Shown: positions 20,849-61,658, counted from the stretch's first letter. The stretch is DNA of 64,000 bases from Haliotis cracherodii (GCF_022045235.1 NW_027266286.1:46128001-46192000); one strand, 5' to 3'. Program-made: numbers and translations. The notes: generated by a model from the letters alone, not told the origin.

Positions 20849-21174
20849 TTTAATTACAGGTGGAGTTACACGAGGCTAACACTGTATTCACACCAGTAAC
20901 ATTTACCATTAACCATTACCAGTAACCATTGCCATTTACATATGTGTAGTGAAACAGCAGCTATTGAGCAAGGTGCATGATCTGTACACATATCGCAAAG
21001 ATGAGATCACGGATGAATTCAATAACGTATTGACACTGCCTAAACGTGGTGGTAAAGGGACCCGCCTTGTACAATAACGATCATAGGCTGCTGGTACACC
21101 TAAGGGACGGTGCTCTGCAAGCAAATTGCGACCTTTCAGACAATGGGGCCACCAGTCCTCCGATGGTCTTACAG

Positions 21175-41653: not shown

Positions 41654-42001
41654 GTCAGTATTTTGGTGATGTAAACCAAAGCACACATTCCGTTTTTAAA
41701 TCAGATCCTCAGAAACCTGTCCAAGCATGATCTGTTAAGTCAACTGGTATTATTTCGCCTATATACACGCATATATGTTCCAATGCTAGGAATGTTCTTT
41801 AGGAAATAAAACAATTCACACAACATCATGTGTGTATACATAAATATATATCACAACCCTGACAGATAGCTACGTGTATATGATGCCATCAATTACACAG
41901 TGCTGATTAGACATCTACATGAATTGTGGTGTCTAATGTGGTGTTGATTACATTATTCACCGTGTATAACACCTCATCTGTGATAGTGATTATACACCTT
42001 C

Positions 42002-42056
42002 TATATAACCCAGTCCACTTTGAGTCCTTGGCATCCGAACCGAGAGACTACTCAAG
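42002..42056 (+). promoter_or_regulatory. TATA box and short non-coding exon 1 of peptide gene copy 1
   Basis: TATATAA at 42002-42008, then about 25 nt later a segment ending GAGAGACTACTCAAG|GTAAG (donor 42057). The same arrangement occurs at 50500-50555 and 60693-60746. Splicing puts CTCAAG directly before the ATG at 43161. Confidence 0.75.
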
Positions 42057-42254
42057 GTAAGTCAATCTGTGCAGGTTCTATTGAAATTCAAATAGATTTC
42101 ACTGTTCACCGCCGATTCTGTTCAGAAAGATACTTTGATTAAGACTGTATTTGTTTGTGTCGCTGATCTTATCGCCGTCTGCCCGACGGCTCAACAGTAG
42201 ATGAAATACGTTGAATATGAACCCAAGCACTCGTCTGAATACGTGTATTACCCT

Positions 42255-42535
42255 TGAATATCCGGGTTAAAATGGGCCTGCAGCAACCCATGCTTGTCGT
42301 TAAAGGCGACTATGCTTGTCTTAAGATGCGACAAACGGGATCGGGCGATCAGGTTCGCTGACTTGGTTGATGCATGTCATCGTATGCCAGTTGCGTAGTT
42401 TGATGCTCATGGTGTTAATCACTGGATTGTCTGGTCCAGACTCCCTTATTTACAAACCGCCGTTAGCTGGAATAGTGTTCGGCGTTAAACAGCAGCAGCA
42501 ACAACAACAAGAAGAACAACAAGAAGAACAACAAA
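42255..42535 (+). mobile_element. GACCCGTGAAG-family SINE-like copy in intron 1 of peptide gene copy 1
   Basis: Aligns with the family; the tail has expanded into CAG/CAA/GAA triplets. Confidence 0.75.
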
Positions 42536-43160
42536 ATAATACATGTGTGTATCCTCCAATGTTGAAAGATATTTGCTTTCTAAGCTCTCAGCACCGATAC
42601 ACAAACCTCATCAACAATAACGATGCGAGTTTATGAGCACATGCATTAATGAAAAAAGCGTAACTCGTTCTGAAGTCTTGACGTCCAATAATGGACATTT
42701 TTGTTCATATCTAATTAAAGTCACCTAAACGGTTACCAATTGTATACTCAAACTTCATCAAGCAGAAGAAATTGAACTCTGTTTTTAATTTGACATCCGT
42801 CGTATGAGAATCCTCAGTCCCCAATGGTGTTTACTTTTTGTCGTGTTTTTTATCTTCCACAGTCTCAAATTACTTCTTAGCCGTATCCTACAACAATCAA
42901 AGCTGTATTTTCTAGCTCTCTAGACACCAAAATACGATAAAAGAAGGTACTTGTTGTTACCGTGCCTGAATCATCTCGGAATTAAGGGGCAAAAACAAGG
43001 ACTGGTCGGCTCGGAGTCTGTACACACAATGTACATCGCTATTTAAGTGCAATAATCTTGAACGCGACGTTAAACACCATTTCACCTAACCTCACCTCAA
43101 TCAATGTGATAACTTATGTATGCACAGCTGATTGCTTTATGTGCCCATATCTGTTTCCAG

Positions 43161-44987
43161 ATGAGACTGCTCGTGGTGTTCCTCCTGGTGGCTTTGATTG
43201 TTCTCCCCACGGAGGGACTGTTCCGTCGTCGTCGTCGCCGATGGCTCCGTGTCAGAGGCAGTAGGGTTCTCGCTGGCCTTGCTGTTGCTAGCAGACTCGG
43301 TCTGATAGGAAAGAGAGGTAAGACGATGAAAATGTTGACCACCATCCGACATGCAACCGTTTTTATATGAATTTTGTATTGCCAAATTACAAATGTGACA
43401 TATTCACATAGGTATTAATTGTCGTTAAGGCCGATGTGGCGTTTTCAAGAAGCGTCATACGACTCTTGCTCAAAATTCGTTTCATCAGACTTAAAGCATT
43501 CAATGCCTTAGTAAAGCTTTCATAAAGTTTTGCGATAGACATGTGGAGCACAATTCCACATTTGACCCATCCGTGACTATAATGATATCCGATACACTTC
43601 TCTATTTTGACTTTGACTTTTCATTTTTGCCCTGAACTATTGACGCGCCTATGCAATTTAATAGCAATGGACACGCTATAAACGACCATATCATATTACT
43701 TAATCTTTTGAAGTGTTGAGAATTATAAGATTGAAACATATCCTATTTACATATCATAACGTCACATCTTTATTGCTTCTAGGGACATAGGTTAGGCACA
43801 GGTTCACAAAGCTCTACATTTTGCTTGTTGTAAGAGGCAAACAAGTTGGATCGGTGGTAAAGCGCGGTTTCATGGTTGATTGCCGCTGGCGTTCCCCGTC
43901 GCCATGGGACGCTGCATATACTGCCAACCACAGGTTTTTCAGGCCTAGACCAGTATATTTACTGGCTGCCATTACAATTACAATATTGATGAATGCACCA
44001 TAACATAACAACAAAACAAAGAAACACGCAAAATTCATACCATTCCAATTTGATTTACAGAATAATACAATAAAATCATGGATATGTTTTATTTGTCAAT
44101 TATAGATTAAAGATAAACTAGGTATTATCATTTCCTGTTGTGGGGGAACTGCATTGTTCGATTATTAATGATGACATTCACGACTAATCACGTATTTGTC
44201 AGAGGCACAAGATGAACTTTTCTCTGCTGATCTGAATGAGGATGGGAACATTGACCAATCGGAAGCTGAGAATCTCTTCGACAATCGCGATGCGGAAGAA
44301 ATCATGCAAATGGCTGACATTGACGGCAAGTAACTAAATAGCGGATGCATATAGTTTTAAAACAGTTATATGTATTTAGCACTACTAGAGATTCAATTGT
44401 GATTCACTTCTGAAAATAAACTGTGTTTGAGTAGTATAGCGTGTCATAAAACGCAGAATTTGCCTTGACCACATGGTCAGTAGGACTGTTAAGGGTTCCT
44501 TGCATTTGAACTACATTTATGGCTTGTCACCGTATCCCAAATACGTGGATCGATGCGCATGATGTCAGTCACTGGATTGTCTGGTCCAGACTCGATTATT
44601 TACAGTCCGCCGTCATATAGCTGGAATACTGCTGACTGCGGCGTTAACCAACCAACAAACAAAAAAACATTTATGGCTGTGATTGTATCCCTCTCTATTT
44701 ACCATTCATTGATTCGTCTTTGTGTGTTTCAGGTGACTCTGTTGTTAGTCATGAAGAGTTCATCCGAGGAGCGGAAGACTTTTTCTCTCAAAGTGTGTAC
44801 TATTCTATTTTATCAAATATAATTATAAAATATCACTGCATTTTTCTAATGATGATATGTGTACCACTCCTCTCTTTATCATGGTCGTCACTATATGGCT
44901 GAGATACTGCCGATGTGACGTAAAACTTTAACTCACTCACTCACTTTATCATGGCTTTATTTGCTTTTTGTTTTAGATGCTGAGTAG
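43161..44987 (+). CDS. Cationic (antimicrobial-like) peptide precursor with C-terminal acidic two-EF-hand pro-domain, copy 1 (intact, 116 aa)
   Basis: Coding exons 43161-43317, 44203-44325, 44733-44792 and 44977-44987 splice in frame (all phase 1; the 44326 donor is GC-AAGT). Product: MRLLVVFLLVALIVLPTEG | LFRRRRRRWLRVRGSRVLAGLAVASRLGLI | GKR | EAQDELFSADLNEDGNIDQSEAENLFDNRDAEEIMQMADIDGDSVVSHEEFIRGAEDFFSQNAE*. It has a hydrophobic signal peptide, 10 Arg and no acidic residue in the mature region, and EF loops DLNEDGNIDQSE and DIDGDSVVSHEE. Exon sizes are matched in the paralogues. Confidence 0.88.
44885..44943 (+). mobile_element. 5'-truncated retroposon 3' end in the last intron of peptide gene copy 1
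   Basis: (ACTC)n-tailed fragment flanked by the 11-nt duplication CTTTATCATGG (44874-44884 and 44944-44954). Absent from the homologous intron of copy 2. Confidence 0.7.
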
Positions 44988-45051
44988 ATATTTTCGACAA
45001 AAGTACAGCAAGATGAAATAATCTGTCAGATTTTCTACACCGGTGCTTGAA

Positions 45052-45057
45052 AATAAA
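45052..45057 (+). terminator. Polyadenylation signal of peptide gene copy 1
   Basis: AATAAA about 65 nt after the stop, in a 3' UTR context (TGAAAATAAATCA) conserved in copies 2 and 3. Confidence 0.7.
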
Positions 45058-45110
45058 TCAGTGCAGAACAAACTGTTTTTATCATTGTTATTTGTCACTA
45101 AACCTGAAAG

Positions 45111-45374
45111 GACCCGTGAAGCTCCCGGGTAGAATAGGTCTTCAGCAACCCATTCTTGTCGTAAAAGGCTACTATGCTTGTTGTAAGAGGCGACTAACGG
45201 GATCGGGTGGTCAGGCTCGCTGACGTGTTTGAAGCATGTCATCGATCCCAATTGCGTGGATCGATGCTCATGATATCAATCACTGGATTGTCTGGTTCAG
45301 ACTCGATTATTTACAGACCGCCGTCACATAGCTGTAATATTGCTGAGTGCGGCCTAACCAACCAACCAACCAAC
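45111..45374 (+). mobile_element. Abundant ~270-nt SINE-like repeat (GACCCGTGAAG... family), full-length copy
   Basis: Begins GACCCGTGAAG, contains GTAAGAGGCGACTAACGGGATCGGGTGG and ACTGGATTGTCTGG, and ends in a (CAAC/CAAA)n tail. More than a dozen copies or fragments occur in the window. Confidence 0.85.
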
Positions 45375-45891
45375 TTAAACTGAAAGTCAAATACGGTTCA
45401 CTTAACCTTCAGCAAATGATCATATACACGGATCTACATTAGATGACATTCGCATACTTTGATTCCTTCCATTGTGTTACATTTTTTATGACTCGGGCTT
45501 TGCTATGAGGGAGGAAGTGAACAGATTTTTTTCCAAGAGTCCTCAGTATGTGAGCTGTGAACAACACAATGCAAATTATAACCCACACTCAATAACACAT
45601 CCAACAGGCTTAGTTGTTTAAGGTGGAAATGACTTATGTCGTTCATAATTTTTAAAGTGAAAGAAAAGTTTAAGAAGACTAGATTTTGTGAGTTCAGGTT
45701 ACAATTTAAAAAAAAATCAACGTTCGACGTACGTGAATGAGGCTGTCAGAATGCTGTTATTCAGAACATGCTGGACAGAGGGTTACTTACGTCATATTAA
45801 TTTTGTTCTACTGCATATTGACAGCGAGGTTTAAGTCTTCATGAATGATATGACCTGTAATACATAACTGTAATACAGACGAGGGACAAAG

Positions 45892-45923
<32 letters not shown>

Positions 45924-47189
45924 CATTGTGAGGGGTGTATAAATCTGCAAAGATACATTAATATTGCATAAGCTCTATATGTACATAAGCCAATTGAAAA
46001 TGATATGCCATAAGCTGATTCATACTGTAATAATCATGTCTGAACCAGACAATCCAGTGATTGACATCATGAGCATCGATCCACGTCATCGTATCGCAAT
46101 TGCGTGGATCGATGTTCATGATGTCAATCGCTGGATTGTCTGGTTCAGACTCCATTAAGGTGGAATATTGCTGAGTGCGGCGTTGAACAACAAACAAACA
46201 AACAAACAATCAAATCATACTGTTTAAAAGATGGGCATACGTGGAGTTACCCGACCTTTGATGTGTACACAACACTCAACACCCCTACATATTTGCTAAG
46301 GATCTAACTACATATAGTTAGAATTGGATGTTTCTCTCTTGAATATTCTGATATTGTTGAATTAAACTCTGGTTTATGAATGAAATACCTGATCATAAAT
46401 GAGGTTAAATCAGCAACAGTTGATGAGTTGCGCGCTTTTCAAACGGGGTCCCTGAAGACATCAATTGCATGAAAGAACGACCAACCACAGAGGAAATGTT
46501 CATCTTTTGAGATGACAATAGACTTCATCAAGAAAGAAATAGAGAACTTTAGACTCTCAGCAATATTCCAGCTACTCATTTATGACGGCGGCCTGTAAAT
46601 AATCGGGTCTTGAATAGACAACCCAGTGATTGAAATCTTGAGCATCGATCTAAGCAATTGGGATACGATGACATAGGTCTTCAGCAACCCGTGGGATCGG
46701 GTGGTCAACCCGATCCCACGGGTTGCTGAAGACCTATTCTAACCCGGATCTTCACAGGTCTAGCAGCAAAATTCAGGCAGTCGATAAACACCAATCCATT
46801 CTTATCAGATAACTAGGGCATCTCAAATAATGTAAGACAGATCTAGATTATTGCAGAAATGCGATGTCGTGGTTGATTGTCACTTTTCAAGATCGGCCGC
46901 CTCCAGACGAAACCACTGAAGACAGATGACAAAAGGCAAACACAGACTTCAGCGAGAAGATCGAGGTCAAAGGTGATTAATGACGGTAGACAGCCGACCC
47001 CAAATGCCAACCTGGAGGAGAAGTCACAACCTTCACTCAGTAATACCAGTGATGCTCCTGAATAGGGGCGAGGCCATGGACCAGAGAACCGTCAAGCACC
47101 AATCCTTACCATTTCCTTATCAGGTGAATATTTACTTACTCATTGTCATAACGTTTGAACATGGAATGTTAACGGTAGATATTATAACT

Positions 47190-47860
47190 CGATGATTTTA
47201 AATTTTCTGAAATATTTATCTGAGTTTGACTTTCTGTATTTACTGGAAACAGTCAGTGATAAAAAACTATTCAATTCCATATTTATTAGTGTTTACACCT
47301 TATTTAGTGAAATTCACATGGACGACTGTTGGACGGTTTGTATATTTTGTCAAAAATACATCAGAACCATTGCGCACACTTGTACATGTGATGCTTGGTA
47401 TTGATAATTCTGTTGCTCTGAGAATACTTAAACGGGCACAGCAAAGTAAAAATGATATTTCTTGATAGGTATGTACGTATCAGAGGGGTCCCCATACTAT
47501 ACATCAAGTTGGAAAAACGTTGGTATTGAACTCCTTGAGCAGTGGTTGGATGACAACCCAGATATCCTAGCTCACCGATGGACGCAGTGACAACCCCTCC
47601 CGAGAGTTTATCTGACCTATCCGGGAACGTTTTTCCAGAAGAAGAAGCGGTGCCACTTAACAGTCGCAATATTATAGTAAGTGACAATATTACCAATAAA
47701 TTTGAAAGAATATTATTAAAGCTGTGTAATACTTTCAATTTTCATATTCTCAACGGACCCCGAAGGAGAATTTACCTTCAACACGATTATTTTATCGCTG
47801 GAGTTGATAGCCACTGCATGTAAAGGACAGGGTTGAACCGGATCATATGCCATTTAAGCC
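47190..47860 (+). mobile_element. Decayed LINE (CR1/L2-group) endonuclease fragment
   Basis: Frame-broken motifs FLKYLSEFDFLYLLET, SDNITNKF..LLKLCNTFNFHILNG, DYFI and RVEPDHMP are typical of AP-endonuclease domains of LINE ORF2. Confidence 0.75.
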
Positions 47861-48714
47861 ATTGGTAATGCGTAGTCAGCAACATTCAGATATATGTATG
47901 TATGTAGTGATAATTACAAATGCACCTGGAATCCAACTGTAGCTAATGTATATATTTCAAATATCCACCGTGCCTCCCAATCACCTTTACAATCAACTAA
48001 GCTAGCGGATACAAGCATTGATCACGTTTCGAATCATTTGTCCAGGGTTTCTTTACGAAAGCCTAACGGTGCCACTTGGGTAGCATATATATTTATTTTT
48101 TAATCGAAATTTCGCGATATTACAAATATTGGTTTATTTTCACGAATTTGTTTTCTTTGGTCGTTATTTCGGGTATATTTTCGTAATTTCAATTATTTTC
48201 CCGTTACTTCCATTATTTACTCGTGGTTTCAATTTTTTTTGCTTTTCAGTTGATGAAAGAGGCAGGGACAAACTAACAATGTCCCGTCACAATATATAAT
48301 ACCAGCATCACCGTTGTGTGTTACTAGGAATGTGACACCACTGTCTCTTCAAAGCTTGTTTGCTCGTTTGTTGATCGCTCACCCCCCTATCATCAAAACA
48401 TATATTGTCTCACAAGGGATGCCACAGTTCGCTTTGGTGAGACCTGACCACCCGATCCCGCTAGCCGGATCTTACGAGGCATAGTCGCCTTTTACGGCAA
48501 ACATGTATTGGGTTGTTCAAGACCTATTCTTACTCTGATTTGGAAAGGGGTACGCCCACACTAAAGAATTATATATCCGTGGCATCAAAAATGACCCCCC
48601 CCACCAGAGAAAATTTGAAAATCCAAAAGTACCATAATAAACACTGAACGAAAGTCAGCAAAGAGGAAGTCTTCAAGCCCGGTTAAATTAATATATTGTT
48701 TATTCCGTTAGTAG

Positions 48715-48993
48715 GTTAGGTGAGGTAAAATATGGTTTAACGTCGTGTCTTCTTCTACTTGTCCCTGACACGTGCCGATTTTATGGTGCAAGTCCACAAA
48801 ATATTGGCAGCAGTTTAACATGAATACTCCATGGCCACTCTGACACTCCGACACAGTATTCTGACCTCGTTTCAGACCCTTAATGCCTGTAACAAGTACC
48901 ATCGTGTTACGTCTTTTGGTATGACGCGGCCGCGGATCGGATCCCACACCTTTTGCTCTCCAGGCAGACACTCTACCACTAGACCACGTAGGC
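48715..48993 (-). mobile_element. Meta-like SINE copy (diverged)
   Basis: Aligns with 2667-3020 with internal deletions. Confidence 0.65.
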
Positions 48994-49849
48994 ATTCGTA
49001 GGCATATACATTATCATTCAATATATTATAGTACTTATAAGTTCAATAGTTCCGTTTAAACGGTATTGTGATCCATAATTATGTGCCTCCAAGACAAAAT
49101 ATGCAAACGAAATTTTATGAGGAAGCTTAAATATTCACTGTCACAGGATTATGTACAAACAGCAAGCAGGTTTCAAAGCGACACATCATTACACACCGTA
49201 AATATAAATGATACCAATTACGATTTGTGTATGGCTATCCAGCATGAATATAGAACTATTATTTGTTTGTGTTAAACCTGAGGCCACATTTTTTTCCACC
49301 GTTTTCTGGAACAAATTACTTTTTGACAAAAGTACCAGCCACCTTCCTGTATAACTTAAGATGTGAAATTAGGAGACTGTTGTTTAGGTAAAAGATACCG
49401 TATTTCGCAATTTTACTTAGATTAATTAGCTCTGGGAATGCAAAACCTCACCCGCTCGCATCAGACACTCTCTGACAGGTGGTGGTGAGTCAGCTAATAT
49501 TAGCAGACTAATATACCTGTATAAGCACCGACGTGAACTTACAGGTTGGGCTTGGGATAGGTTGCTGTATGTGGCACACAGATTGAGTCTGCCACATCAT
49601 AGTGACAGATGTCATCAACATGGCGCATGTCAATGTTACAATTAATGGTTGATTCTATTTTTCAGAAACCATATGTCATATGCGATGTTTGATTTGTTTG
49701 ATGCTTTAGGCCACACTCAGCAATCTTTAATCTACATGTATATTGCAACGGCTTGTAAATGATCGTTTGGATTAGACAAAGGTTTGGCAAAAAGTCACAT
49801 CGTATGCCATTTTTACTATCAAACACCTCTCAACCCTTTCTCTCATAGA

Positions 49850-50016
49850 GGGGCGGTCGGGTAGCCTAGTGGTTAAAGCATTCGCTCGTCACCCCGAAGA
49901 CCCGCGTTCGATTCCCGACATGGGTACAATGTGTGAAGCCCATTTCTGGTGTCCCCCTCCGTGATATTGCTGGAATAGTGCTAAAAGCGGCGTAAAAATC
50001 ATACTCACTCACCCAC
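49850..50016 (+). mobile_element. Short tRNA-derived SINE
   Basis: Same family; target-site duplication TTCTCTCATAGA. Inserted in the upstream region of peptide gene copy 2. Confidence 0.85.
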
Positions 50017-50499
50017 TTCTCTCATAGAAATCAATAAAAGTAACAAAATCATAATCATAAGAAGTCACTGTCAAGAGAAGAGTCCAATGTACGATTCCAA
50101 CTCCAACATGAAGATGTGTTTATGAATCACTATCAAATATTGGCGATACTAGGTCTTCGCGAAAAAAAGTATGAAGGGAAGTCCAAAGTTGACCATCATT
50201 GAACGATATCAGATTATCAAGAAAGCATTATCAGAATCTCATATTCCTGTCATGGCCACGTGATCCTTTCAGTAGGCTCGCATTAGTTGCATGCATAATC
50301 TGTGCCTAGTTTAGCAATGTTCATTGTGAATGAAATAAAACAAACCCAAAACCTAATTTATAATCACACGAACACATGGTGATGATGCATGGATGCTATC
50401 GATTATACAGTACTGATTTGAACTGACGTCGTGTTGAAATACATTATTCATCGCTTGTCATGCCAAACACCTCATCTGTGATAGTAATCGTACACCTTC

Positions 50500-50555
50500 T
50501 ATATAAACCAGCCAACAATGAGTCCATATCATCCGAATTCGAGAGACTACTCAAG
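50500..50555 (+). promoter_or_regulatory. TATA box and non-coding exon 1 of peptide gene copy 2
   Basis: TATATAAA at 50500-50507 and GAGAGACTACTCAAG|GTAAG donor at 50556, homologous to copy 1. Confidence 0.72.
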
Positions 50556-51180
50556 GTAAGATGCGTTGTGTATGATTTGATTGAAATGCTAATAGTTTTT
50601 CATAACGCGAGTGTTCACCACCGATTGTTTAGGAAGATACTTTGATGATATTCAGAATTGTGCGTTTATTTTCGTCACGTAGGGTAACATAAGTTTCATA
50701 CAAACATCCATTAAGGCATTTGTATTTGTTTGCGTTTCTGAGCTCATCTCCCATCTTTCCATCCTGCTCAATGAAAGAAAAAGTGTTTTATAACAATCCA
50801 ATTCCTCGTCCGACCACATATGTGTACCATCCCGCTTTGCAAAGAACTCCGCTTATTAAGAGCCCAGGACTGATGCACCAACCTCATCAACAATAACGAT
50901 GCTGAGAGTTTATGTGAACGTGCATGTGCCATTGTCAGAAACTATTTAAATCTATCTAATGTGTTGAAAACCAGTTGTGGATGATTCTGTCCATTTCCAA
51001 ATATTCAACAGTTACCAATGCTAAACAATACAGTTGTGCTTCTTATTTTTCATTGTTTTCGCCCGGCCCTCCCACTGAAGCTGAACTTAAGGTATGACCT
51101 GCAAACATGACACATCGATTACAATACGTAGCCATATTCGTCCGTTGTCACCACACAAAATAATCCCACAAAATAATAGT

Positions 51181-51430
51181 CCCGTGAAGATTCCGGGGTA
51201 GAATAGGTCTTCAGCAACCCATGCTTGCCGCAAAAGGTGACTATGCTTGTCGGAAAAGGCGACTAACGGGATCGGGTGGACTTGGTTGATGCATCTCATC
51301 GATCCCAATTGCATGGATTGATGCTCATGATATTAATCACTGGATTGACTGGTCCAGACTCTATTATTTACAGACCGCCGTCATATAGCTGGAATATTGC
51401 TGAGTGCGTCGTTAAACAACAAACCAACAA
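51181..51430 (+). mobile_element. GACCCGTGAAG-family SINE-like copy in intron 1 of peptide gene copy 2
   Basis: Aligns with the family. Confidence 0.8.
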
Positions 51431-52443
51431 CACAAAATAATATATATTTGTATTTCTTGTATTTGTTCAGATGAAACTAAAGAAAAAAAAAGAAAGCCCA
51501 GGCTCTATTAAGAGCTAAGTTGAAAAGTGTTCGCCAATGATTCTGTTAAAGAAATCACTCTGATGATATCCATAGTTTTGTGGTTATTTTCTCCCTGTGT
51601 GTTTGGCTAGTGTTTCATGCAGTTCTATTGGCGTACGAAAGTCATCAGTGTCTCACTGAGCCTATGTTTTATGATCTTCCGCAGTTCCAACCGATTCTTC
51701 CGCTGAAATATGAAAATGTTTCCTCGTTTATAACGACCCATTCGATTAGATAATAGATATCATCCCACTTTTGAAAGTTGTTTTTTATTTATATTTTTTT
51801 ATGAACCAGATTTGAACTACGGAGTTAAAGTGTGAACCACGTTTGTCAATATTCTCAAACAAAGATAATTAAATATACATTTTTGTCTCACAGCTGTTCT
51901 CTATGAAGACGAGCAGGGATGAGTAAAACACACACAATGATATGAATTGACTCAAATATTGATTACTGTGCGTAGCCAGATTCTTCCTAATACTGGTCGA
52001 TATGAGGCAATTCATGTTGATGTTGGTTATTTTGGAAACAGACCTGTACTTTCAAATAAGCGGTTGTGAGGGTAGATTCAGTACACGTGGTGTTCCTTCA
52101 AAATGGATTTCGCCAAAGTGAGATTTTGTATTGGATTCTGATTCAGAAACCTCAAGTTAAAAAAAACCGAAACACGGTTGGTTTGACTCGAATCTACCCT
52201 GACAAAGTGACCGCTGATAACCGAAGTCCTTTGGTGATAATAATTATAATTAGTTTTTATTCTCACTTTGGAATTTTTTTGAACATCCATCTAACCCCTA
52301 TATGTATAACTGAATTACTTTTAAGAGTGGCATTAAAACAAAATACACTAACACACACACACTTGCTTTTAGTTGTCCACCATTTGTCTTCCTGTAATTA
52401 TAATGCATAACTGATTCTTTTATGTGCCATTCTCTGTTTCCAG

Positions 52444-54148
52444 ATGAGACTGCTCGTAGTGTTCCTCCTGATGGCTTTGATTGTTTTCCCCACCGAGGGT
52501 CGTCGTCGTCGCAGATGGCTCCGTATCAGAGGCAGTAAGGTTCTCGCTGGCCTTGCTGTTGCTAGCAAACTGGGACAGATAGGAAAGAGAGGCAAGGCAA
52601 TGCTGATAACCATCCGATCTTCAACTTTTGTAGTGCCAAATTAACAATGATAACTATCAACATACATATAGTAACAGTCATTATATGGTAGATGTGGCGT
52701 TAAATCCTAAAACACATACTCACTCATTCAGTTATCTACATCTAAAAAAATGACGGGAAAGAATTATTCATTTAATTTCTTTTTAAATCAGGGCGCTCGT
52801 CATGACCTCGATGACCCGGGTTCGATTCCCGACATGGGTACAATGCGTTAAGCACATTTCTGGTGTTCCCTGCCATGATATTGCTGGAATATTGCAGAAA
52901 GCGGCGTAAAACCAAACTCACTCTTTGAAATCGTTTCAACAAATTATATCACGCGAGTGTTGCTTTAAAGTTATGTCCAGTGGAGTTCCCTTTTTTGACT
53001 TGTTCCCCATACAAACGCTACAAACAACCATGTTGATTTTTGTTGTGAAATGTAGAGAACAATATCATATTGTAGAAAATAATAATGTCCCAAGACCTGA
53101 GGGACACGTGAGGTCCTTAGAGGTCGTTGGCACGCATTATATTTTGCTTATAATAAGGGACGATTAAATGGGATCGGCCGTGAATTTCGATGTCTTGGTT
53201 GATTGCAAATATTGTAACCTGACGTTGAACATAATGCTAACCAGTGGTTAATCTTGCCTAGAGATTTATATTTACAGGCTGGCATGGAAAAATTGATATA
53301 CAGTCAACTACGATTTTAACGAACACGCTTATAACGATTTGACGGATAAAACGTACTGTTGTTTTTGCCCCGGGGATTTGCTGTATATATCATGTATATA
53401 TGCTTATAATGAACTACGGTTATAACGAACTAAAATTGATGGTCCCTTTGCGTTTGTTATAACCGTAGTTTAATGTTTGGCTGACTGCAGCATAACACAA
53501 CAAACAAACATACCATTGAATAACATACGTGTCTTGTTTGTCAATTAAAACATCGTTTTTACATCTAGGTATAATAATGAATTATTCTGTTGTGGAAGAA
53601 CTGCCTTGTTTCTGTACTGATGAAGACATTAACGAACTCACAATTCATGTAATCCGTCACATATTTTCTAGATGTGCAAAATGAACTTACCTCTGCTGAT
53701 CTGAATAAGGATGGGAACACTGACCAAACAGAAGCTGAGAATCTCTTCGATAAACGCGATGCGGAACAAATCCTGGAAATGCTTGACATAGATGGCAAGT
53801 ACCGAAATAGCAGATGCATGGGAATGTCTTTTTTATCGCAACGAGAGATTGCTTTGTGCTTCACGTCTGAACATAACATGTGAAAGAGTACAATGTACTT
53901 AGCGTGACATAATTGTTGCTTCTTGTAAGCAGTTTATAAAAAAATCCCTGATCACCAGTTTACCATGACCGTAAACGTTGCAGAGTCCTTGCAACTGTGT
54001 TGCTTCAGTTCTCGTACATAATATATCTTGCAGTGTCTTGACTTTTTTGATTGTATACCTGCAAATTTGATTAAGCATTCCTTATTTCCTCTTTCTGTGT
54101 ACAGGTGACTCAGTTGTAAATCATGATGAGTTCATCCGAGCAGTGTAA
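52444..54148 (+). CDS. Cationic peptide/EF-hand precursor, copy 2 (104 aa, slightly truncated; possibly decaying)
   Basis: Exons 52444-52591 (donor GC-AAGG), 53672-53794 (donor GC-AAGT) and 54105-54164, with TAA at 54146-54148 where the paralogues have GAA. The former last coding exon is at 54276-54286. Product: MRLLVVFLLMALIVFPTEG | RRRRRWLRIRGSKVLAGLAVASKLGQI | GKR | DVQNELTSADLNKDGNTDQTEAENLFDKRDAEQILEMLDIDGDSVVNHDEFIRAV*. Confidence 0.75.
52793..52923 (+). mobile_element. Short tRNA-derived SINE (5'-truncated)
   Basis: B box and 3' body of the 11011 family. Confidence 0.7.
53301..53475. mobile_element. MITE, same family as 23763-23938
   Basis: Aligns end to end with 23763-23938; lies in intron 2 of peptide gene copy 2. 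Confidence 0.75.
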
Positions 54149-54347
54149 CACCTTTTCTCTCAGGGTGGGTGTTCTATTTTATCGAATATAATTATAATAT
54201 ATCATGGATTTCTCAAATGATGATATGCGTACCACTTCTCTCGTTATCAAGGAATGTTTTCGTTTTTTGTTTTAGATGCTGCATAGATACATTCGACACA
54301 AATCCAAGATGAAATAACGTGTCAGATTTTCTACACTGATGTTTGAA

Positions 54348-54353
54348 AATAAA
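54348..54353 (+). terminator. Polyadenylation signal of peptide gene copy 2
   Basis: AATAAA in the 3' UTR position homologous to copies 1 and 3. Confidence 0.65.
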
Positions 54354-55519
54354 TCATTGCTGCACAAACTCTTCAACAATTGTTGTTTGTCACCTAACCT
54401 TACAGTCACAGTTCAATTAACCTTTTTGAAAAGACCAATGTCATATTCAACTACAAGAATATGTGTAAGATTCGTATATTTTGATTCCAGGTGTTTCACG
54501 TAAATAAATAATACAAAACCCTTCCTATATCATTTGTTCATAAAAATAAAAGCGACAAAACCATGTAGGTCAGGTCTCACCTGTAAATAAAGTGATCAGA
54601 ATAGGTCTTGAACTTGCGTTTGGAAAGAAAGGAGAGACCCCTTCACAAACACCTGACAAGGGTGCACCGTAAGAACATGAATTGTTGGTTTGAGACTAAA
54701 TAGATCCCCCTTGTTCACCACAGAACACCGACAGAAGGATTATGATTTTGTATTGTATCAGAGAATTGGCTGAATCCGAGGAATAATCTTATTACATGCT
54801 GATGTCAGAACATGCATGCAGAACATTCAATAGTGGATTTGTACCTATATGCATCTAGGAAAATGTTCGGGGGCAAAGGTGGCATTTTGTTGGATCAGAA
54901 ATCTGTGATCGTAGATTCGAGTTCCGGTTCATCCTGTTTATATTTCTGAGTTTGTCAGCATCATACGCTTGCTCCTGGGACCTACATCACTTCGACCTTG
55001 CTCCCCCGTCAAGCTGACACTCAAAGTGGCGTTTAACCCACAAACACTGGGCAAGTGTTCGATGTCATCGTTGGTCTGTAACCTCGTACTGATATGCACC
55101 TTAGAGGGACTCTTGAAATGTTCTAAGCCCATGCATTCTATATTCGCCGCTTATTTAAGGCCACATGACATGTGTTACGAGGGAGCATAAGACTGCAAAG
55201 AAACATATAAATAAATGTGTTTGCAAGATGGGCATCTATCGTTGTGAAATAACATCGTATTTATCATGTTAAATTTTACTAAAATGTATGCAATCAGTGA
55301 CTTTTATCACGAATAGCAATGTTTAAGGCGGTAGTAAATTACAATGTATGTGAATAGTACCATGAGTATACAGGAGGTGCATTTAAGTATTTAGTGGATG
55401 GACAAATATATAGTGAACAGCAAAAGAAAGTCAAGTTTTAAACAGTGATGGGGTCAGGTATATACTGTTGAGGAAGTAAACAATGTAAACGTCTTCCTGA
55501 ATCGTATCATTACAATGAA

Positions 55520-56395
55520 ACGCAAGTTGCAAATGAGATACGACCAACATCATTGGCGCAAACGCAACGTCCAAAACGTTGGTGTGGGCACGTTGCGAAA
55601 GGTTCTTGTAAACATGTTTAACACATGGTAGCTATGGTTATAACGCCACAAAAAGCATCGACGACCACGTAGTGGTCGACCCATCGTCATCACACCTGGA
55701 CAAGATGGTCATATCCGCAAGAAGTTGCAGAAACGATTCACCAGGGCCACTGAAATAGCTTGGCAAACAGTGGACATTTAGTCAGTGCCGACACAGTCCG
55801 ACGTCGTCGAAGGACCAACGACGTCTTATGCCATCGTCCAGGTCCCCATTCTTACAAACCGTAACCGACAGGAACGACTTTGACTGGCCACACAGCATGA
55901 ACATTGGCGTCATCAGCAATGGAGGGCCATCATCTACAATGATGAGAGAGTCGATATTGCATCTCAACGTCGGATGGTAGAATCAGGGTAGGCGAAAGGG
56001 GGACGAACGGTAACGAATTGTAAAAGGGGCAATCCATGCATCATGTTTTGGGGAGGAATAAGACGGAAGCAGCGAGCTGGACCCGTGGTCTTTCAGAACA
56101 TAGGCCACGGCAGGTATAATGGCGTCACTGCTATCTGCAACACCGACCACGTTTTCAGACCGTAGGTCCTGCCGAGGTACGCCCGTCACTGGAAATACGT
56201 ATTCCAGCTGGACAACGCCCGTCCCTATACGGCTATAGTCAACAGTGACTTCCAACAGTAGCACAACATCTCGATCATACTTTGGCCCGCCCTCAAGGCG
56301 AGTGGCAAAAACGGACTTTCTCCGCTGTTTTACACACGTATACTAATATTTGAAACAAAACATGTTGATACATTTCGTTTGCTGCTGAATAAGTA
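55520..56395 (+). mobile_element. Decayed Tc1 transposase
   Basis: Frame-broken motifs RPRSGRP, VSADTVRRR, QWRAIIYNDE, FQLDNARPYTA and LWPA are diagnostic of Tc1-type DDE transposases. Confidence 0.85.
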
Positions 56396-56532
56396 TAATA
56401 TTAGATGTTTAAACGTCACATCTTGAGAATATGAAGCTCCACCCCACTATAACGATGTTATATTATAATCCTCAACATCCTGTGCCTCGGGCATTGTAAA
56501 CTTTTTCAGTTCAATGTGCATGAAGGGTTTTG

Positions 56533-56744
56533 TACGGAAGCGTAGTAGGGCCACGGTGAAAGTTTTTGTGTCTAAGAATCTACTACGTAGGACTTAGTAT
56601 CTTCCACGTAGGACTTAGTATCTCATAAGATAGTAAGTCCTAAGTAGGAAATAGTAATTATAAGACCTACGTAGAAGATACTAAGTCCTGCGCAGCAGAT
56701 CTTAGACAAAACAATTGTCACCATGGCCCCACTACGCTTCCGTA
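56533..56744. mobile_element. Non-autonomous DNA transposon, IS3EU-like
   Basis: Long imperfect TIRs TACGGAAGCGTAGT...ACTACGCTTCCGTA with 6-bp target-site duplication GTTTTG (56527-56532 and 56745-56750). Confidence 0.8.
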
Positions 56745-57371
56745 GTTTTGCAAACAAATTACAATTTTATTCCCAGGCTACTGCGGGATAAAATATGGAA
56801 AAATTGAAAAAATGTCCATAACTCTCCACAAAAACGATGTGTTTAGTTACATTCCTCAAGACCAGTGCCATTCAAATAGTCCTCGTAAGAGTGCCCGGAA
56901 ATGCCTTCTCAATGTACGTCCTTTGATCTGACCTGGTCCGATCCTCCGTGTCGCAACCTTTTCCTAATTACATGTTACTGGCATGTCCTAAGGTGGACTA
57001 CCACTCTGTTTAGGACTACATATTTTGGGAAGCGACTATAATGTACCCTAACGTATCAACACAACTGTATAAAAGTCAGAAAAAGCGAGAGTAACGCTTT
57101 CAAATCGCTCACTCCAAACATGCTTTTAAATGGCACCCTGGTTAATCTGACAATTCAGAATTAACCATCAAGCACTTCTTGATTTAATACAGTTGCTGAA
57201 CCAATCTTTGCAATATTTTGTTTGGCGCAAATCCAGTCAACTTGTTTCCTTTCTGACATTTATGGCGACCTCAATACTAGTTTTTAGTGTCTTCGTGTTT
57301 CCAAATTTTTTATAATCTTCATTAACAATACCATTCGGTTCTTGTTGGATTTGTCCGCTGACTGACATTTA

Positions 57372-57645
57372 GTTGATTGGTTAGCTGGTATGTTGTTTTA
57401 CGCGACACTCAGCAATATTCAAGCTGTATGACGGGGGTCTGTAAATAATCGGGTCTGGACCAGACAATCCAGTGTTTGATATCATGAGCATCGATCCGCG
57501 CAATTGGGATACGATGACATGCATCAACCAAGTCTGCGAGACTGACAACCCGATCCCGTTAGTCGCCTCTTACGACAGGCTTAGTCGCTTATTACGGCAG
57601 GAATGGGTTGCTGAAGACATATTCTACCCCGGACCTTCACGGGTC
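57372..57645 (-). mobile_element. GACCCGTGAAG-family SINE-like copy (full length)
   Basis: Reverse-complement match. Confidence 0.82.
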
Positions 57646-59344
57646 TGACTGACATTTCGTTAATGCCTTTTCCAGTAGTATGATACATGATATTTGAAGA
57701 TATTCAACGGTTTTCCACCGTGACGTCAAATGAAGTGACAATACAATACAAATGCCACCGATACACATTTATAGCCAAGAGTTTTGAAATGATAAAACAA
57801 GCATATGTATGACACATGTTTTGATCGTTTACAGACGCTTCTTTTTGTTTTTGGTACTGAATTCTAGGGATTGTTTGTTTGTTGTGACACTATACTCCTT
57901 CGTGTAAATAAGCCTTTGTTGCGTATGAAGGACAACATTGTCATCACAACATATAAACAATAAACACAAAAATATGGGTGGAACTTAGCTTACATCACAA
58001 ACACAACCATAAGCGGAGACACGGCTCGGACAGGTATAGGTAGGTATATATTCTTCATACATGCATATGTTATACATTGAAATATAGCTTGTTAATGGAT
58101 TATGAAATAATATAGTCTGTAACGCGAAGAGCAGATGACAACTTATTTTGATGAATAGCTCTCTTGTGTACTCTGTATCATTTATGTGGACTGATATGTC
58201 AAGTTTAGTGTTGTATAAAGTATCAATCGTTGACGTTGCTACGCCCGGATGCGATGGGAGTGAGTGAAAATATCTACAATTTCTGTCTTGGATTTGGCTA
58301 CAGAATCGGAACTGCTAAATGAAATGTCTAATGGTGGTCAGTAGAGGATATCTGCGCCATATTCACTTTTTATCATAGCGGTATATCAGGAAATCACACA
58401 CCGCGTTAACAGTTTTGCATAACATTATAAATGATAGCATTTAACTTTTTAACTTTTTAATTCCCTCATACGTCTAATATGCGGAGATATTCTTTTTATG
58501 GCGTCATGCAGTGCAACGAGGTTGCAATGCAGGGACGTCATAGTATAAAAAATATCACAGCGCAAATTCTATTCACCATTTTATTCACCTATGACCAAAG
58601 CCATACATGTACGTATACACGACCTGTCGTAGTATGTGAATAAATTCCCTTAACTTGATATTTTACGCTGGATCTTTGACGTTTTGTGTAATAGCCTCCT
58701 GACCTGACGCCACCTTAAACACCATTTCACTTATATGTGTAAGCTTAAATACACAACGAAAGTTCACAAAGAATAGGCTTCAGGGCTGGATAAAATAATG
58801 AATTGTTTATTCACGTAGTAAGTACGCAATATCTTTCAATATATCCTTACGTAGCTATACGTTGGCACAAATGCCATTTGTTCAATATATCCGATTAAAA
58901 GGTTTTTTTTGTCTATGATCCCGTAGCTCTATTATAATGTTTTCAAAGATAATATGAGACAGGTATATATTATTATCACAGGATTATGTATACATATCAA
59001 GCAAGGTTTCAAGCTCATCACTCCACCTTTTGTGTAGTGTATAGTGATGTTACAGAGGCTTTCGGCTCAGATTAGAACGCTGAACGAGTGTTCTCGAATA
59101 ATATTTATCTGAGAAATATAGTGTGCCTTTATCCCTCGTAGAGTCTCAATCCTTGGATATTTCAAAGACGCCGTTAATATATATAACACTATGGACGATT
59201 TTGGGTCCATCAAACAAATACTTGTTTTTGTAAAACCCGAAGCAAAAATAAACATTTGCCAGTATTTGCTGATTCATGAAACAAATTAATTTCCCAACCC
59301 CTCTCCTGAATACTTTTAGAGGTGACATTAGGAGACGGTGTTGT

Positions 59345-59820
59345 TTAAGTAAGACTTATATAACTTAACTAGCGCTTTGGCTAAAGCTAGATGTTGATAT
59401 TATTTCTATCCAAATTGAACTAGGGCGGTATATTAACATGCCTTCTGAGGAAGTGTTTTCAGTGTTTGAACATTATGGAAGACGAATGCCATGTTATTTT
59501 CAATTGTCCTGTGTATAATGTTGAGCGATGTAGTTCCCTTAACAAATGGCACACTTCTTAAATTGTATCAGCTCGTGAGATATACAGAAAATACAAGCCT
59601 ATATGTTTACAGATAATATTTCATGTCCTCTTACCAAAAAACTAAAGTGATTTACACAGCTGCTGATCAGCTTCTGTTTTCTTTTGATATGCTAAATACG
59701 TAAATACATTTTAGAAGAGTCTCTCCGATCTCCGTTTGGAGTGGTCCATGCATGTATTGTACTTGTTACAATGTTGTGACGACTTGGAGTAAAAGTGTAA
59801 TACAAATCTGTCTCTCTGTC
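59345..59820 (+). mobile_element. LINE ORF2 3' fragment (C-terminal zinc-finger region) and tail
   Basis: Broken frame ALAKARC...IELGRYINMP...CFQCLNIMEDECHVIFNCPVY, followed by a (TCTG)-type tail. Confidence 0.7.
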
Positions 59821-60692
59821 TGGTTGTCTCGTCAATAGGCAAGATCGGTATTATCATACTAAGATTGATCTCTGGGAATGCAAACTTGTAAATCCTATAT
59901 GTGATCCCCGTTCACCCATTCTCACTCTCACTGGCTGGTATCAGACACAGCTCTAACAGGATGTGGTGACCATAATAAACAGAATATGATTAATGACGTG
60001 AAAAGATGGGCTTAGCTTGGTATGGGTTGCTGTATGTGAACCACAGGTTAAACCTGCCTCGTTAGATGAGTGACTAATGTCATTAGCATGTGACATGTCA
60101 GTGCAACAATATATTGTTGATTTATTTCACAGAAACCATTTGTGATTTTGTGAAAGAACATCTAGAAATGACCTATTTCATTTGTTGGATGTTCTAAACT
60201 GAACAGTCTTTCACCTGTATTGCAGCGATCTGTATATAATCTAGCGCTGACCAGACAAACCAGTGATTGATATCATATGCCATGCACTCCCCCAATCCCT
60301 CAATCGCCACCACCCCTCTCTCTCTCCCTCTTCCCTCTCTCTTCGCTATATGACTGGAATAATGTCGATCCGACGTTAAAGTTTAACTCACTCACTCCCC
60401 TCTCTCTCCTATCTCAAGACAGTGGTGTAATAACACAAAGCATACATTTCATTATATTAATCAGAACCTCGGATTTCCGTCATATCCATCCAATCGTTTA
60501 AGTCGCCTCGTATTTGTCATATTGACACGAAAATGTAACTTACACTAATTGATAGTTATATCTAACTTGCTATCGATTAGTCAGCGCTGATTGGACAGCT
60601 ACGCATATTGTGGTGTCTGAAGTGCTGTTGAATACATTATTCAACGTTGATCCCGTCAAACACCTCAGCTGTGGCAATGATCACATACATTC

Positions 60693-61658
60693 TATATAAA
60701 GTCAACAAGCATGTCCCTGGCATCTGACTTCGAGAGGCTACTCAAGGTAAGTTACTGTGTGTAGATACTATTAAAAGTACGTTGATGATATTGCGTTAAT
60801 TGTACTCATATAGGTTAACAGATGTAGAACCAGTCCTAAAGATGTCTGCATTTGTTTGTCACTCTGGTCCGTAGGGCAGATGTAACGTTCCTCTTGTTGC
60901 AGATTTTAAAAAATACAACTTTATTTTCATTGAAAAGCTCATCAGCGCAAATTCCGTTAATGAAATAACTACAGTATTCTATAGCAATTTATTAAATTAC
61001 GATTCTTTGAATCTTCCAAGATGTGCAGGATGACCTTGCCTCTGCTGATCTGAATGAGGATGGCAACATTGACCAATCAGAAGCTGAGAATCTATTCGAC
61101 AAACGAGATGCGGAACAAATCCTGAACTTGGTTGACATAGATGGCAAGTAACGAAATAGCAGATGTAATGATTTCAACCTGTCATGTGTATGTTTTTATC
61201 ACAATGAAATATGCTATTGAGATTCCTGTCTGAAATTAACTTGTGTATGAGTGGTCAGCCGTCATCATGGCAGTCTCATGGGTCCTTGATATTAAACTGC
61301 TTTATAACTTCAATTCTAATACATATGTTTCAGAGTCATGTATGGATTTGAATATATTCCTGTCGTTTTTGTCTGGCATTCATTGTTTGTGATGGTGTTT
61401 TCAGGTGACTCAGTTGTCAGTCATGATGAGTTCATCCGAGGAATGGAAGACCTTCTCTCACAGGGTGGGTGTTGTTCTGTTTGGATACGGGTAATTTCTT
61501 ATAATATATCACGTGATTTCTCTAATTATTCGTGTAATTTCTGTCTTTCTCATATACAATGTGTTTTTTGTTGTTGTAGGTGACGAGTAGATGCTTTCAA
61601 CACTAGTGCTACAAGTGATATAATATATCAGTGTTTCTATCCGATGCTTGAAAATAAA
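60693..61658 (+). pseudogene. Peptide/EF-hand gene copy 3, lacking the signal+cationic-peptide exon (EF-hand exons intact)
   Basis: TATA at 60693-60700, exon 1 ending 60746, then only 274 nt to the EF-hand exons 61021-61143, 61405-61464 and 61580-61590 (DVQDDLASADLNEDGNIDQSEAENLFDKRDAEQILNLVDIDGDSVVSHDEFIRGMEDLLSQGDE*). AATAAA at 61653-61658. No exon-2 homologue is visible and there is no upstream ATG in the EF-hand frame. Confidence 0.75.

What the first reader, a model, noticed from the sequence alone, without database searches (positions are those of the whole stretch)
42002..61658. Tandem gene family: amidated Arg-rich peptide fused to an acidic two-EF-hand pro-domain (candidate Ca2+-gated antimicrobial peptide system)
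Seen in sequence: hand-splicing gives signal peptide (..PTEG) + LFRRRRRRWLRVRGSRVLAGLAVASRLGLI (10 Arg, no acidic residues, no Cys) + GKR + a 64-aa domain with 21 Asp/Glu against 2 Arg and two EF-hand loops. The gene recurs three times with the same exon structure, and the ORF track misses it because it is split into short exons. Established knowledge: G-K-R signals prohormone-convertase cleavage plus PAM amidation. Mussel myticalins are linear cationic peptides with an acidic C-terminal pro-piece, and mussel mytimycins carry a C-terminal EF-hand but have a Cys-rich mature peptide. Inference: this precursor combines a linear cationic peptide with an EF-hand pro-domain, and I do not recognise it as a named family. 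The anionic EF-hand module could sequester the peptide and release it on Ca2+ binding in the secretory pathway, haemolymph or seawater.
Basis: partly seen in the sequence, partly recalled or inferred. Interest (0 to 1): 0.92.

Follow-up and report, generated by a model that had tools for sequence, protein, structure and literature searches.

The report
Abalone cationic-peptide/EF-hand precursor gene array
This is a real tandem array of black-abalone genes, each encoding a secreted precursor that joins an arginine-rich peptide through a Gly-Lys-Arg processing site to a small calcium-binding domain; it looks like an antimicrobial-peptide family, but its only named relative is a pearl-oyster "shell" protein and no activity has been tested.

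Summary
The hand-spliced 116-aa protein is correct. It is identical to a RefSeq model of Haliotis cracherodii ("calcium-binding protein 5-like", a misnomer).

Of the three units in the interval:
- Copy 1 is intact.
- Copy 2 has an early stop in the second EF-hand.
- Copy 3 lost the peptide exon through a ~1.1 kb deletion.

The array is larger than reported. It holds 12 head-to-tail units, 9 of them intact, and runs 88 kb past the window. The genome carries at least 60 related loci.

Signal peptide, peptide and EF-hand domain are all under purifying selection. The peptide evolves fastest. Both calcium loops are canonical.

The same layout occurs in other Haliotis loci, in the vent snail Gigantopelta, and in Pinctada. 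Its parts are a signal peptide, a Trp/Arg-rich Cys-free peptide, a G-K-R site and an acidic EF-hand pair. Pinctada fucata EFCBP, published as a shell-regeneration protein, is the only named member, so the family is not unnamed.

A host-defence role is the best reading, from the architecture and a gene layout parallel to myticalins, but it is untested. Calcium-triggered release is unsupported. I could obtain no RNA reads.

This scan had already reported the same family on another contig of this genome (s1-823166).

The parts
42002..42056 (+). Copy 1 (g01): TATA box 42002-42008 and non-coding 5' exon ending at donor CAAG|GTAAG (42056). The transcription start is not mapped.
   Evidence: The block is conserved in all 12 units.
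43161..43317 (+). g01 exon 1. The ATG sits directly after the acceptor. Signal peptide 43161-43217, 30-aa Arg-rich peptide 43218-43307, Gly-Lys-Arg 43308-43316, phase-1 donor G|GTAAGA.
   Evidence: Equals residues 1-52 of RefSeq P0001.
44203..44325 (+). g01 exon 2: EF-hand 1 and the first four residues of the EF-hand 2 loop. The donor is G|GCAAGT (GC-AG intron).
   Evidence: Paralogues g07-g12 have GT at the same position.
44733..44792 (+). g01 exon 3: the rest of the EF-hand 2 loop and its exiting helix.
44977..45057 (+). g01 exon 4: last three codons, stop at 44985-44987, 3'UTR with AATAAA at 45052-45057.
50500..50555 (+). Copy 2 (g02): TATA box and 5' non-coding exon.
52444..52591 (+). g02 exon 1: signal, a peptide three residues shorter with 5 consecutive Arg, then GKR. 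The donor is G|GCAAGG.
   Evidence: Equals P0013.
53672..53794 (+). g02 exon 2 (EF-hand 1 and the start of EF-hand 2), GC donor.
54105..54164 (+). g02 exon 3, with a premature TAA at 54146-54148 that truncates the last helix (104-aa product).
54276..54353 (+). g02 exon 4 and 3'UTR, AATAAA at 54348-54353.
60693..60746 (+). Copy 3 (g03): TATA box and 5' exon. Its ATG at 60710 is out of frame with the EF exons once the peptide exon is missing.
60941..60965 (+). g03 deletion junction. About 1,123 bp present in g04, including the signal/peptide exon, are absent here.
   Evidence: blastn of g03 against g04.
61021..61658 (+). g03 EF-hand exons 61021-61143, 61405-61464 and 61580-61590, with AATAAA at 61653-61658. 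The 64-codon frame is open but has no start codon or signal, so this is a probable recent pseudogene.
   Evidence: 98.6% identical to g04 downstream of the deletion.

Best explanation
The interval holds the first three units of a 12-unit tandem array in Haliotis cracherodii (C23:46.170-46.280 Mb). The array is one subfamily of a mollusc-wide family of secreted prepropeptides.

Each intact gene has five parts:
- a TATA promoter and a 5'UTR exon;
- one exon encoding a cleavable signal peptide;
- in that same exon, a 29-33-aa Cys-free peptide with an (Arg)5-8-Trp head and a hydrophobic Gly/Ala/Leu tail (net +9 to +13);
- still in that exon, an invariant Gly-Lys-Arg;
- three exons encoding an acidic, compact pair of canonical EF-hands (net about -18).

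Most likely mechanism:
1. The precursor enters the secretory pathway.
2. The EF-hand pair folds with Ca2+ and keeps the polycationic, potentially lytic peptide soluble and harmless.
3. A prohormone convertase cuts after Lys-Arg, carboxypeptidase trims the basic residues, and PAM uses the Gly to amidate the C-terminus.
4. The freed peptide acts as a membrane-active host-defence effector.

Shown: the gene models, the selective constraint, the conserved architecture across taxa and the EF-hand fold. Inferred: signal cleavage, convertase cleavage, amidation, antimicrobial activity and any peptide/EF-hand contact.
For: Gene models:
- They are identical to RefSeq proteins: g01=P0001, g02=P0013, g04/05=P0016, g11=P0014.
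- There are 11 peptide exons with intact frames and conserved splice sites.

Selection among intact copies:
- dN/dS is 0-0.2 for the signal, 0.13-0.93 for the peptide and 0.16-0.39 for the EF domain.
- It is 1.47 for the EF region of the degenerate copy g06.

Conserved architecture:
- 22 diverse members from Haliotis, Gigantopelta and Pinctada share the layout. The peptide is 23-40 aa, net +3 to +16, Trp-rich and almost free of acidic residues.
- The junction is G-K-R in 17 of 22, and the Arg is invariant. The EF domain is net -7 to -22.
- All 22 signals obey the -3/-1 rule, usually with Trp at +1.
- Mean pairwise identity is 0.34 for the signal, 0.20 for the peptide, 0.78 for GKR and 0.33 for the EF domain.
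- G-K-R also lies inside an exon in the C56 subfamily, so splice-site constraint does not explain its conservation.

EF-hand domain:
- Loops are canonical in all intact copies.
- The AF2 EF pair has pLDDT 74-83.
- It superposes on calmodulin and troponin C C-lobes (TM about 0.6, rmsd 2.3-3.3 A).

Parallels with proven antimicrobial peptides:
- Myticalins share the exon layout: a 5'UTR exon, the ATG at the start of exon 2, signal+peptide+KR in one exon, a phase-1 intron, and Gly for amidation.
- Mytimycins carry an EF-hand extension after a dibasic site.
- The genome holds at least 60 loci in tandem clusters.
Against: - There is no direct evidence of transcription of these copies.
- There is no peptide, activity or Ca2+-binding data.
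- The only studied homologue, EFCBP, was interpreted as a shell-formation protein induced by shell damage.
- The EF domain is better conserved than a mere charge-neutralising spacer needs to be, so it may be the main product.
- Peptide dN/dS stays below 1, so there is no clear diversifying selection.
- The helical hydrophobic moment of this subfamily's peptide is low (0.27-0.48).
- The complex prediction gave no verdict.
Confidence: 0.55

Rival explanations
1. Extracellular calcium-binding protein of shell formation and repair, as published for Pinctada EFCBP. The EF-hand domain, or the uncleaved proprotein, is the functional product in the extrapallial space. The polycationic segment tethers it to anionic matrix or mineral. 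This reading does not exclude a host-defence role.
For: - EFCBP responds quickly to shell damage and is listed among biomineralisation genes.
- A Haliotis diversicolor transcript annotated EFCBP is high in postlarvae, the stage when the shell is being built.
- The EF domain is under stronger constraint than the peptide.
- Secreted EF-hand proteins such as Hdh-SMP5 are mantle-enriched in abalone.
Against: - An in-depth P. fucata shell proteome found no EF-hand domain protein.
- A near-invariant convertase/amidation site argues for cleavage.
- Hypervariable Trp/Arg peptides and at least 60 tandem loci are unusual for a Ca2+ buffer.
- Induction by wounding is equally expected of an immune effector.
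Confidence: 0.25
2. One reading: the acidic EF-hand module sequesters the peptide and lets it go when Ca2+ binds after secretion.
For: - Opposite charges on the two halves and canonical Ca2+ loops.
- The EF pair resembles calmodulin lobes. From general knowledge, calmodulin lobes bind basic amphiphilic peptides.
Against: - From general knowledge, ER, Golgi, haemolymph and seawater Ca2+ exceeds typical EF-hand dissociation constants. The domain would already be loaded before secretion.
- In calmodulin-type systems Ca2+ promotes target binding rather than release.
- Charge co-variation is not significant.
- The complex prediction gave no verdict.
Confidence: 0.1
3. Precursor of an amidated signalling peptide (a neuropeptide or hormone), with the EF-hand domain as a sorting or pro-region.
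For: A G-K-R amidation/cleavage motif directly after a signal-led peptide. Further dibasic sites inside the peptide could yield a short hydrophobic amide.
Against: - Net charge of +9 to +13.
- Peptide sequence hypervariable across paralogues and species.
- Dozens of tandem copies.
- None of these is typical of neuropeptide genes.
Confidence: 0.07
4. The N-terminal hydrophobic stretch followed by poly-Arg is an uncleaved reverse signal-anchor (positive-inside rule). That would leave the EF-hands in the cytosol as a membrane-tethered Ca2+ sensor.
For: A strong positive charge lies immediately C-terminal to the hydrophobic core. EF-hands are classically cytosolic.
Against: - The hydrophobic core is only 12-15 residues.
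- It is followed by a polar, often acidic c-region with small residues at -1 and -3 in all 22 members.
- EFCBP was reported as extracellular (reference cited).
Confidence: 0.03

Closest known systems
EFCBP, extracellular EF-hand calcium-binding protein of Pinctada fucata (Huang et al. 2007, BBA 1770:1037; P0100)
   Same: - Signal peptide, a Trp/Arg-rich Cys-free segment of 30 aa (+15), G-K-R, then an acidic two-EF-hand domain.
- The profile alignment runs from the cationic segment through GKR into both EF-hands (hhalign 97%).
   Different: - Only about 25% identity.
- EFCBP has a longer linker with Cys before EF1 and a longer inter-hand helix.
- It is single-copy as far as seen here.
- It was interpreted as a shell-regeneration protein. 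In the papers I could read, its cationic segment and GKR site are not discussed. The original paper is not held in the library.
Myticalins (Mytilus linear cationic AMPs; PMC5577615, PMC12294457)
   Same: - Conserved signal, hypervariable Arg-rich Cys-free peptide of 23-42 aa, Lys-Arg site with Gly for amidation, anionic C-terminal extension and tandem clusters.
- Same exon layout: a 5'UTR exon, the ATG at the start of exon 2, signal+peptide+KR in one exon, and a phase-1 intron.
   Different: - The myticalin extension is low-complexity and unstructured. Here it is a conserved, folded EF-hand pair split over three exons.
- Myticalins have shown antibacterial activity and gill expression. Nothing has been shown here.
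- Sequence homology could not be tested.
Mytimycins (Mytilus antifungal peptides; PMC8004829)
   Same: Signal, cationic mature peptide, dibasic site, then an anionic extension containing an EF-hand whose role is unknown.
   Different: The mytimycin mature peptide is 54 aa with 12 Cys. Here there are no Cys. Homology between the two EF-hand regions was not tested.
CaBP1/CaBP5 and calmodulin C-lobe (source of the RefSeq name)
   Same: Best sequence and structure matches of the EF-hand pair.
   Different: - Those proteins are cytosolic four-EF-hand sensors without a signal peptide.
- Here there are two EF-hands, the stretch between the loops is shorter by 8 residues, and the protein has a secretory leader.
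- The name 'calcium-binding protein 5-like' is a best-hit label, not an orthology statement.

Membership tests
EFCBP-like secreted cationic-peptide/EF-hand precursors | N-terminal cleavable signal peptide | tested here: met
   Hydrophobic core of 12-15 residues with small residues at -1 and -3 in all 22 aligned members. This was judged by inspection; SignalP was not available.
EFCBP-like secreted cationic-peptide/EF-hand precursors | Trp/Arg-rich, Cys-free cationic segment directly after the signal | tested here: met
   Net +9 to +13 in this array and +15 in EFCBP.
EFCBP-like secreted cationic-peptide/EF-hand precursors | Gly-Lys-Arg (or Gly-Arg) junction followed by Asp/Glu | tested here: met
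   Invariant in all 11 peptide exons of the array. The Arg is invariant in the 22-member alignment.
EFCBP-like secreted cationic-peptide/EF-hand precursors | C-terminal acidic pair of EF-hands, alignable to EFCBP | tested here: met
   hhalign probability 97% with E 7e-11. hmmsearch E 2.4e-4 over profile positions 3-111.
EFCBP-like secreted cationic-peptide/EF-hand precursors | Mantle, gill or haemocyte expression and induction by shell damage | not testable with these tools
Myticalin | Linear cationic mature peptide, dibasic site, Gly for amidation, and the same exon layout | tested here: met
   compared with the description read.
Myticalin | Low-complexity unstructured anionic extension | tested here: not met
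   The extension is a folded EF-hand pair.
Myticalin | Sequence homology of signal and extension; demonstrated antibacterial activity | not tested
Mytimycin | Mature peptide with 12 conserved cysteines | tested here: not met
   There are no Cys in the peptide of any of the 11 copies that carry the peptide exon.
Mytimycin | EF-hand-containing extension after a dibasic site | tested here: met
   compared with the description read. This is shared architecture only; homology was not tested.
EF-hand (Pfam PF00036 / PF13499) | Canonical 12-residue loops with ligands at positions 1, 3, 5 and 12, and a helix-loop-helix pair | tested here: met
   - Loops are D-L-N-E-D-G-N-I-D-Q-S-E and D-I/M-D-G/S-D-S-V-V-S-H-E/D-E in all intact copies.
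- PF00036 scores 25.9 bits for P0014 (cut-off 25.4), 25.2 for P0001 and 24.3 for P0016.
- AF2 predicts a four-helix pair.
CaBP5 / neuronal CaBP family (the RefSeq name) | Cytosolic protein with four EF-hands and no signal peptide | tested here: not met
   Two EF-hands behind a secretory leader.

The most novel reading that the evidence does not exclude
The EF-hand pair is a built-in, calmodulin-like receptor. It grips its own melittin-like peptide (cationic head, hydrophobic tail) in the Ca2+-rich secretory pathway, acting as a folded safety catch and carrier. On this reading the EFCBP-like family is an old, mollusc-wide antimicrobial-peptide chassis that has been mislabelled as shell or calcium-binding proteins. 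It has at least 60 loci in abalone, and the mytimycin EF-hand extension, and possibly the myticalin layout, may derive from it.
Probability: 0.2. Interest if true: 0.8.

Novelty: new member of a known kind. Interest (0 to 1): 0.6.

Why it matters
Few abalone host-defence peptides are known, and black abalone is an endangered species devastated by a bacterial disease (withering syndrome).

If these peptides are antimicrobial, this family would be a major, previously unrecognised arm of gastropod immunity. The genome holds at least 60 loci.

It would also give a function to the unexplained EF-hand propiece of mussel mytimycins. And it would prompt a re-reading of the pearl-oyster "shell" protein EFCBP as a wound-induced defence precursor.

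If instead the biomineralisation reading holds, the family is an unusually expanded set of secreted Ca2+-binding proteins with a processed polycationic module. That would still be of interest for shell repair.

Tried and rejected
- Complex prediction (EF domain plus 2 Ca against the peptide): no verdict, score 0.02. This is not evidence either way.
- Foldseek against PDB: generic EF-hand lobes only, with none at E<=0.001.
- The ESM Atlas gave only generic EF-hand leads, all below 0.9.
- Charge-matching between peptide and propiece: weak and not significant.
- Hdh-SMP5, a secreted EF-hand abalone protein, is a different protein. It has three EF-hands, is Asp/Ser/Val-rich and has no cationic peptide.
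- The long multi-EF-hand hits of the representative search are unnamed metagenomic proteins and are uninformative.
- Literature searches for the RefSeq name and for LOC identifiers were blank. No paper in the library describes this family as an antimicrobial family in abalone.
- The original EFCBP paper is not held.
- The broader profile search added no taxa beyond Haliotis, Gigantopelta and Pinctada. It was capped at 8,000 candidates, so absence elsewhere is not shown.
- I considered a reverse signal-anchor topology and rejected it on the c-region features.
- Joined model: I did not send any hand-joined sequence to a search tool. Exon 1 was searched by reference, and later searches used database protein ids. 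Joined models were built only inside scripts, for translation and dN/dS.


Full report
**Where we are.** The window is Haliotis cracherodii contig C23:46,128,001-46,192,000 (RefSeq names). It contains no N.

**Checking the observation.**
- The ORF list shows the signal-plus-peptide exon at 43116-43370 and again at 52444-52644. It also shows three EF-hand exons.
- Direct repeats recover the EF exon, the following exon, the 3'UTR and the promoter three times. They recover the peptide exon only twice.
- Reading the junctions gives a five-exon gene:
  - a TATA box and a short non-coding exon ending CAAG|GTAAG;
  - exon 1, which starts exactly at the ATG and ends one base after Gly-Lys-Arg (phase 1);
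  - exon 2, with EF-hand 1 and the first four residues of loop 2;
  - exon 3, with the rest of EF-hand 2;
  - exon 4, with three codons, the stop and a 3'UTR carrying AATAAA.
- The exon 2 donor in copies 1-5 is G|GCAAGT, a GC-AG intron. Using the nearby GT instead breaks the frame. Paralogues g07-g12 carry G|GTAAGT at the identical position, which settles the phase and gives a canonical second loop.
- The spliced product of copy 1 is 116 aa and identical to RefSeq protein P0001.

**The three copies are not equivalent.**
- Copy 2 has a three-residue-shorter peptide, a GC donor after exon 1 and a TAA at 54146-54148. This truncates the last helix. RefSeq models it as the 104-aa P0013.
- Copy 3 has promoter, 5' exon, EF exons and 3'UTR. 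About 1,123 bp present in copy 4, including the peptide exon, are deleted. Downstream it is 98.6% identical to copy 4, so the loss is recent. Its 5'-exon ATG then runs into a stop after ten codons. I read it as a pseudogene.

**The array is bigger than the finding.**
- A search of the genome with exon 1 found 11 peptide exons, all on the + strand of C23 between 46.171 and 46.277 Mb.
- After fetching the flanking DNA, I mapped 12 units from window-equivalent position 41,990 to 152,021 and built models for each.
- Nine are intact, at 116-119 aa. g04 and g05 are identical. g06 has a destroyed second EF-hand.
- The poly-Arg run is encoded by a (CGT)n-type triplet repeat and varies from 5 to 8 residues between copies.

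**Selection**.
- Among intact copies, pairwise dN/dS is 0-0.2 for the signal, 0.13-0.93 for the peptide and 0.16-0.39 for the EF domain, at dS of 0.05-0.5.
- The EF region of g06 gives 1.47, as expected of a dead copy.
- So both halves are functional. The peptide changes two to four times faster at replacement sites than the EF domain, but not faster than neutral.

**Relatives.**
- The exon 1 reference search returned only Haliotis proteins (H. cracherodii, H. rufescens, H. rubra, H. asinina). All are 'uncharacterized' or 'calcium-binding protein 5-like'.
- A profile search of 1.84 billion representatives found, besides generic EF-hand proteins, about twenty small proteins that align over the whole profile.
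- These come from other Haliotis loci, from Gigantopelta aegis and from Pinctada. One is 'EF-hand calcium-binding protein' of P. fucata, that is, EFCBP.
- All share the same plan:
  - a signal peptide;
  - a 23-40-aa Trp/Arg/Lys-rich segment, almost free of acidic residues and of Cys;
  - G-K-R (17 of 22; the others have GR, RKR or SGR);
  - then Asp and an acidic EF-hand pair.
- Across lineages the peptide is the least conserved part (identity 0.20) and the G-K-R junction the most (0.78).
- EFCBP aligns to the abalone profile from the cationic segment through GKR into both EF-hands, at 97% probability.
- In the abalone's own genome the profile hits 128 exon matches in clusters on C23, C56, C6 and C11. 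That is at least 60 loci. In the large C56 cluster the GKR lies inside an exon, so splice-site constraint does not explain its conservation.

**Structure.**
- Pfam sees EF-hand_1 at or just below threshold.
- The best solved relative by sequence is the CaBP1 C-lobe, which explains the RefSeq name.
- AF2 with the 22-sequence alignment gives a four-helix EF pair at pLDDT 74-83. It gives a low-confidence helix for the peptide.
- Foldseek places the pair next to calmodulin and troponin C C-lobes (TM about 0.6).

**Literature.**
- EFCBP is cited as a two-EF-hand extracellular protein that responds quickly to shell damage. It is listed among biomineralisation genes.
- An in-depth P. fucata shell proteome reports no EF-hand domain among 72 matrix proteins.
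- An EFCBP-annotated transcript is high in H. diversicolor postlarvae.
- Myticalins, proven linear antimicrobial peptides of mussels, have a strikingly parallel precursor and exon layout, but their extension is unstructured.
- Mytimycins have an EF-hand extension of unknown role behind a Cys-rich peptide.
- I found no paper describing this abalone family as antimicrobial.

**Interpretation.**
- The architecture, the near-invariant convertase/amidation site, the hypervariable Trp/Arg peptide between conserved flanks, the tandem birth-and-death dynamics and the myticalin-like layout make a processed host-defence peptide the best reading (0.55).
- The published shell-repair reading is a serious rival and is not exclusive (0.25). 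Wound induction fits both.
The domain should already be Ca2+-loaded in the secretory pathway (general knowledge). Charge co-variation is not significant. The complex prediction gave no verdict.
- If the EF pair binds the peptide as calmodulin binds basic amphiphilic peptides, Ca2+ would favour holding it rather than releasing it. This is inference only.

**Limits.**
- No RNA reads were obtainable.
- No hand-joined sequence was sent to any search tool.
- This scan had already reported the same family on another contig of this genome, with the same EFCBP link (s1-823166). I reached the link independently.

Noticed in passing
Beyond the window: C23:46,193,729-46,280,021 (loci L012-L020): Nine further units of the same array (g04-g12) lie downstream, and eight of them are intact. 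g04 and g05 are identical 6.1-kb repeats. g06 has lost its second EF-hand.
   Followed up: yes
window 41,890-42,008, with the equivalent block upstream of all 12 units: The roughly 110 bp before the TATA box are conserved in at least 10 of 12 units. They contain palindromic homeodomain-like elements (TAATTGATA ... TATCAATTA, and TGAATA.ATTATTCA). No NF-kB-like site stood out.
   Followed up: partly
window 43,224-43,241 and the same place in each peptide exon: The poly-Arg run is a CGT/CGC triplet repeat whose length differs between copies (5 to 8 Arg). This suggests replication slippage tunes the peptide charge.
   Followed up: partly
window 44,326 / 53,795 / 61,144 compared with g07-g12: Copies g01-g05 use a GC-AG intron after exon 2, while g07-g12 use GT-AG at the same site. 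Copy 2 also has a GC donor after exon 1.
   Followed up: yes
window 40,279-40,759, 42,344-42,465, 44,494-44,668, 45,112-45,379, 46,078-46,157, 51,181-51,436; inverted copies at 46,581-46,674 and 57,427-57,520: A short interspersed repeat of about 160 bp litters the introns and spacers of the array. It yields spurious ORFs with motifs such as ITGLSGPDSIIY.
   Followed up: no
G000 C56:55.90-56.07 Mb, C56:53.86-53.90 Mb, C56:0.72-0.84 and 2.34-2.37 Mb, C23:21.25-21.49, 41.12, 70.40-70.46 and 7.33-7.41 Mb, C6, C11: Other tandem clusters of the same superfamily sit at these places. One isolated hit lies on the minus strand about 81 kb upstream of this window (C23:46,046,687). In the big C56 cluster the intron sits inside the peptide rather than after GKR.
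   Followed up: partly
window 9,744-26,325: Another first-reader note (s1-829801) flags genes with an unnamed 8-cysteine extracellular domain upstream of the array. I did not examine it.
   Followed up: no
RefSeq proteins P0004, P0005, P0007, P0012, P0017: Some RefSeq models start at an upstream ATG in the 5' exon. In some cases that ATG overlaps or lies upstream of the TATA box, so these N-terminal extensions are probably annotation artefacts.
   Followed up: partly
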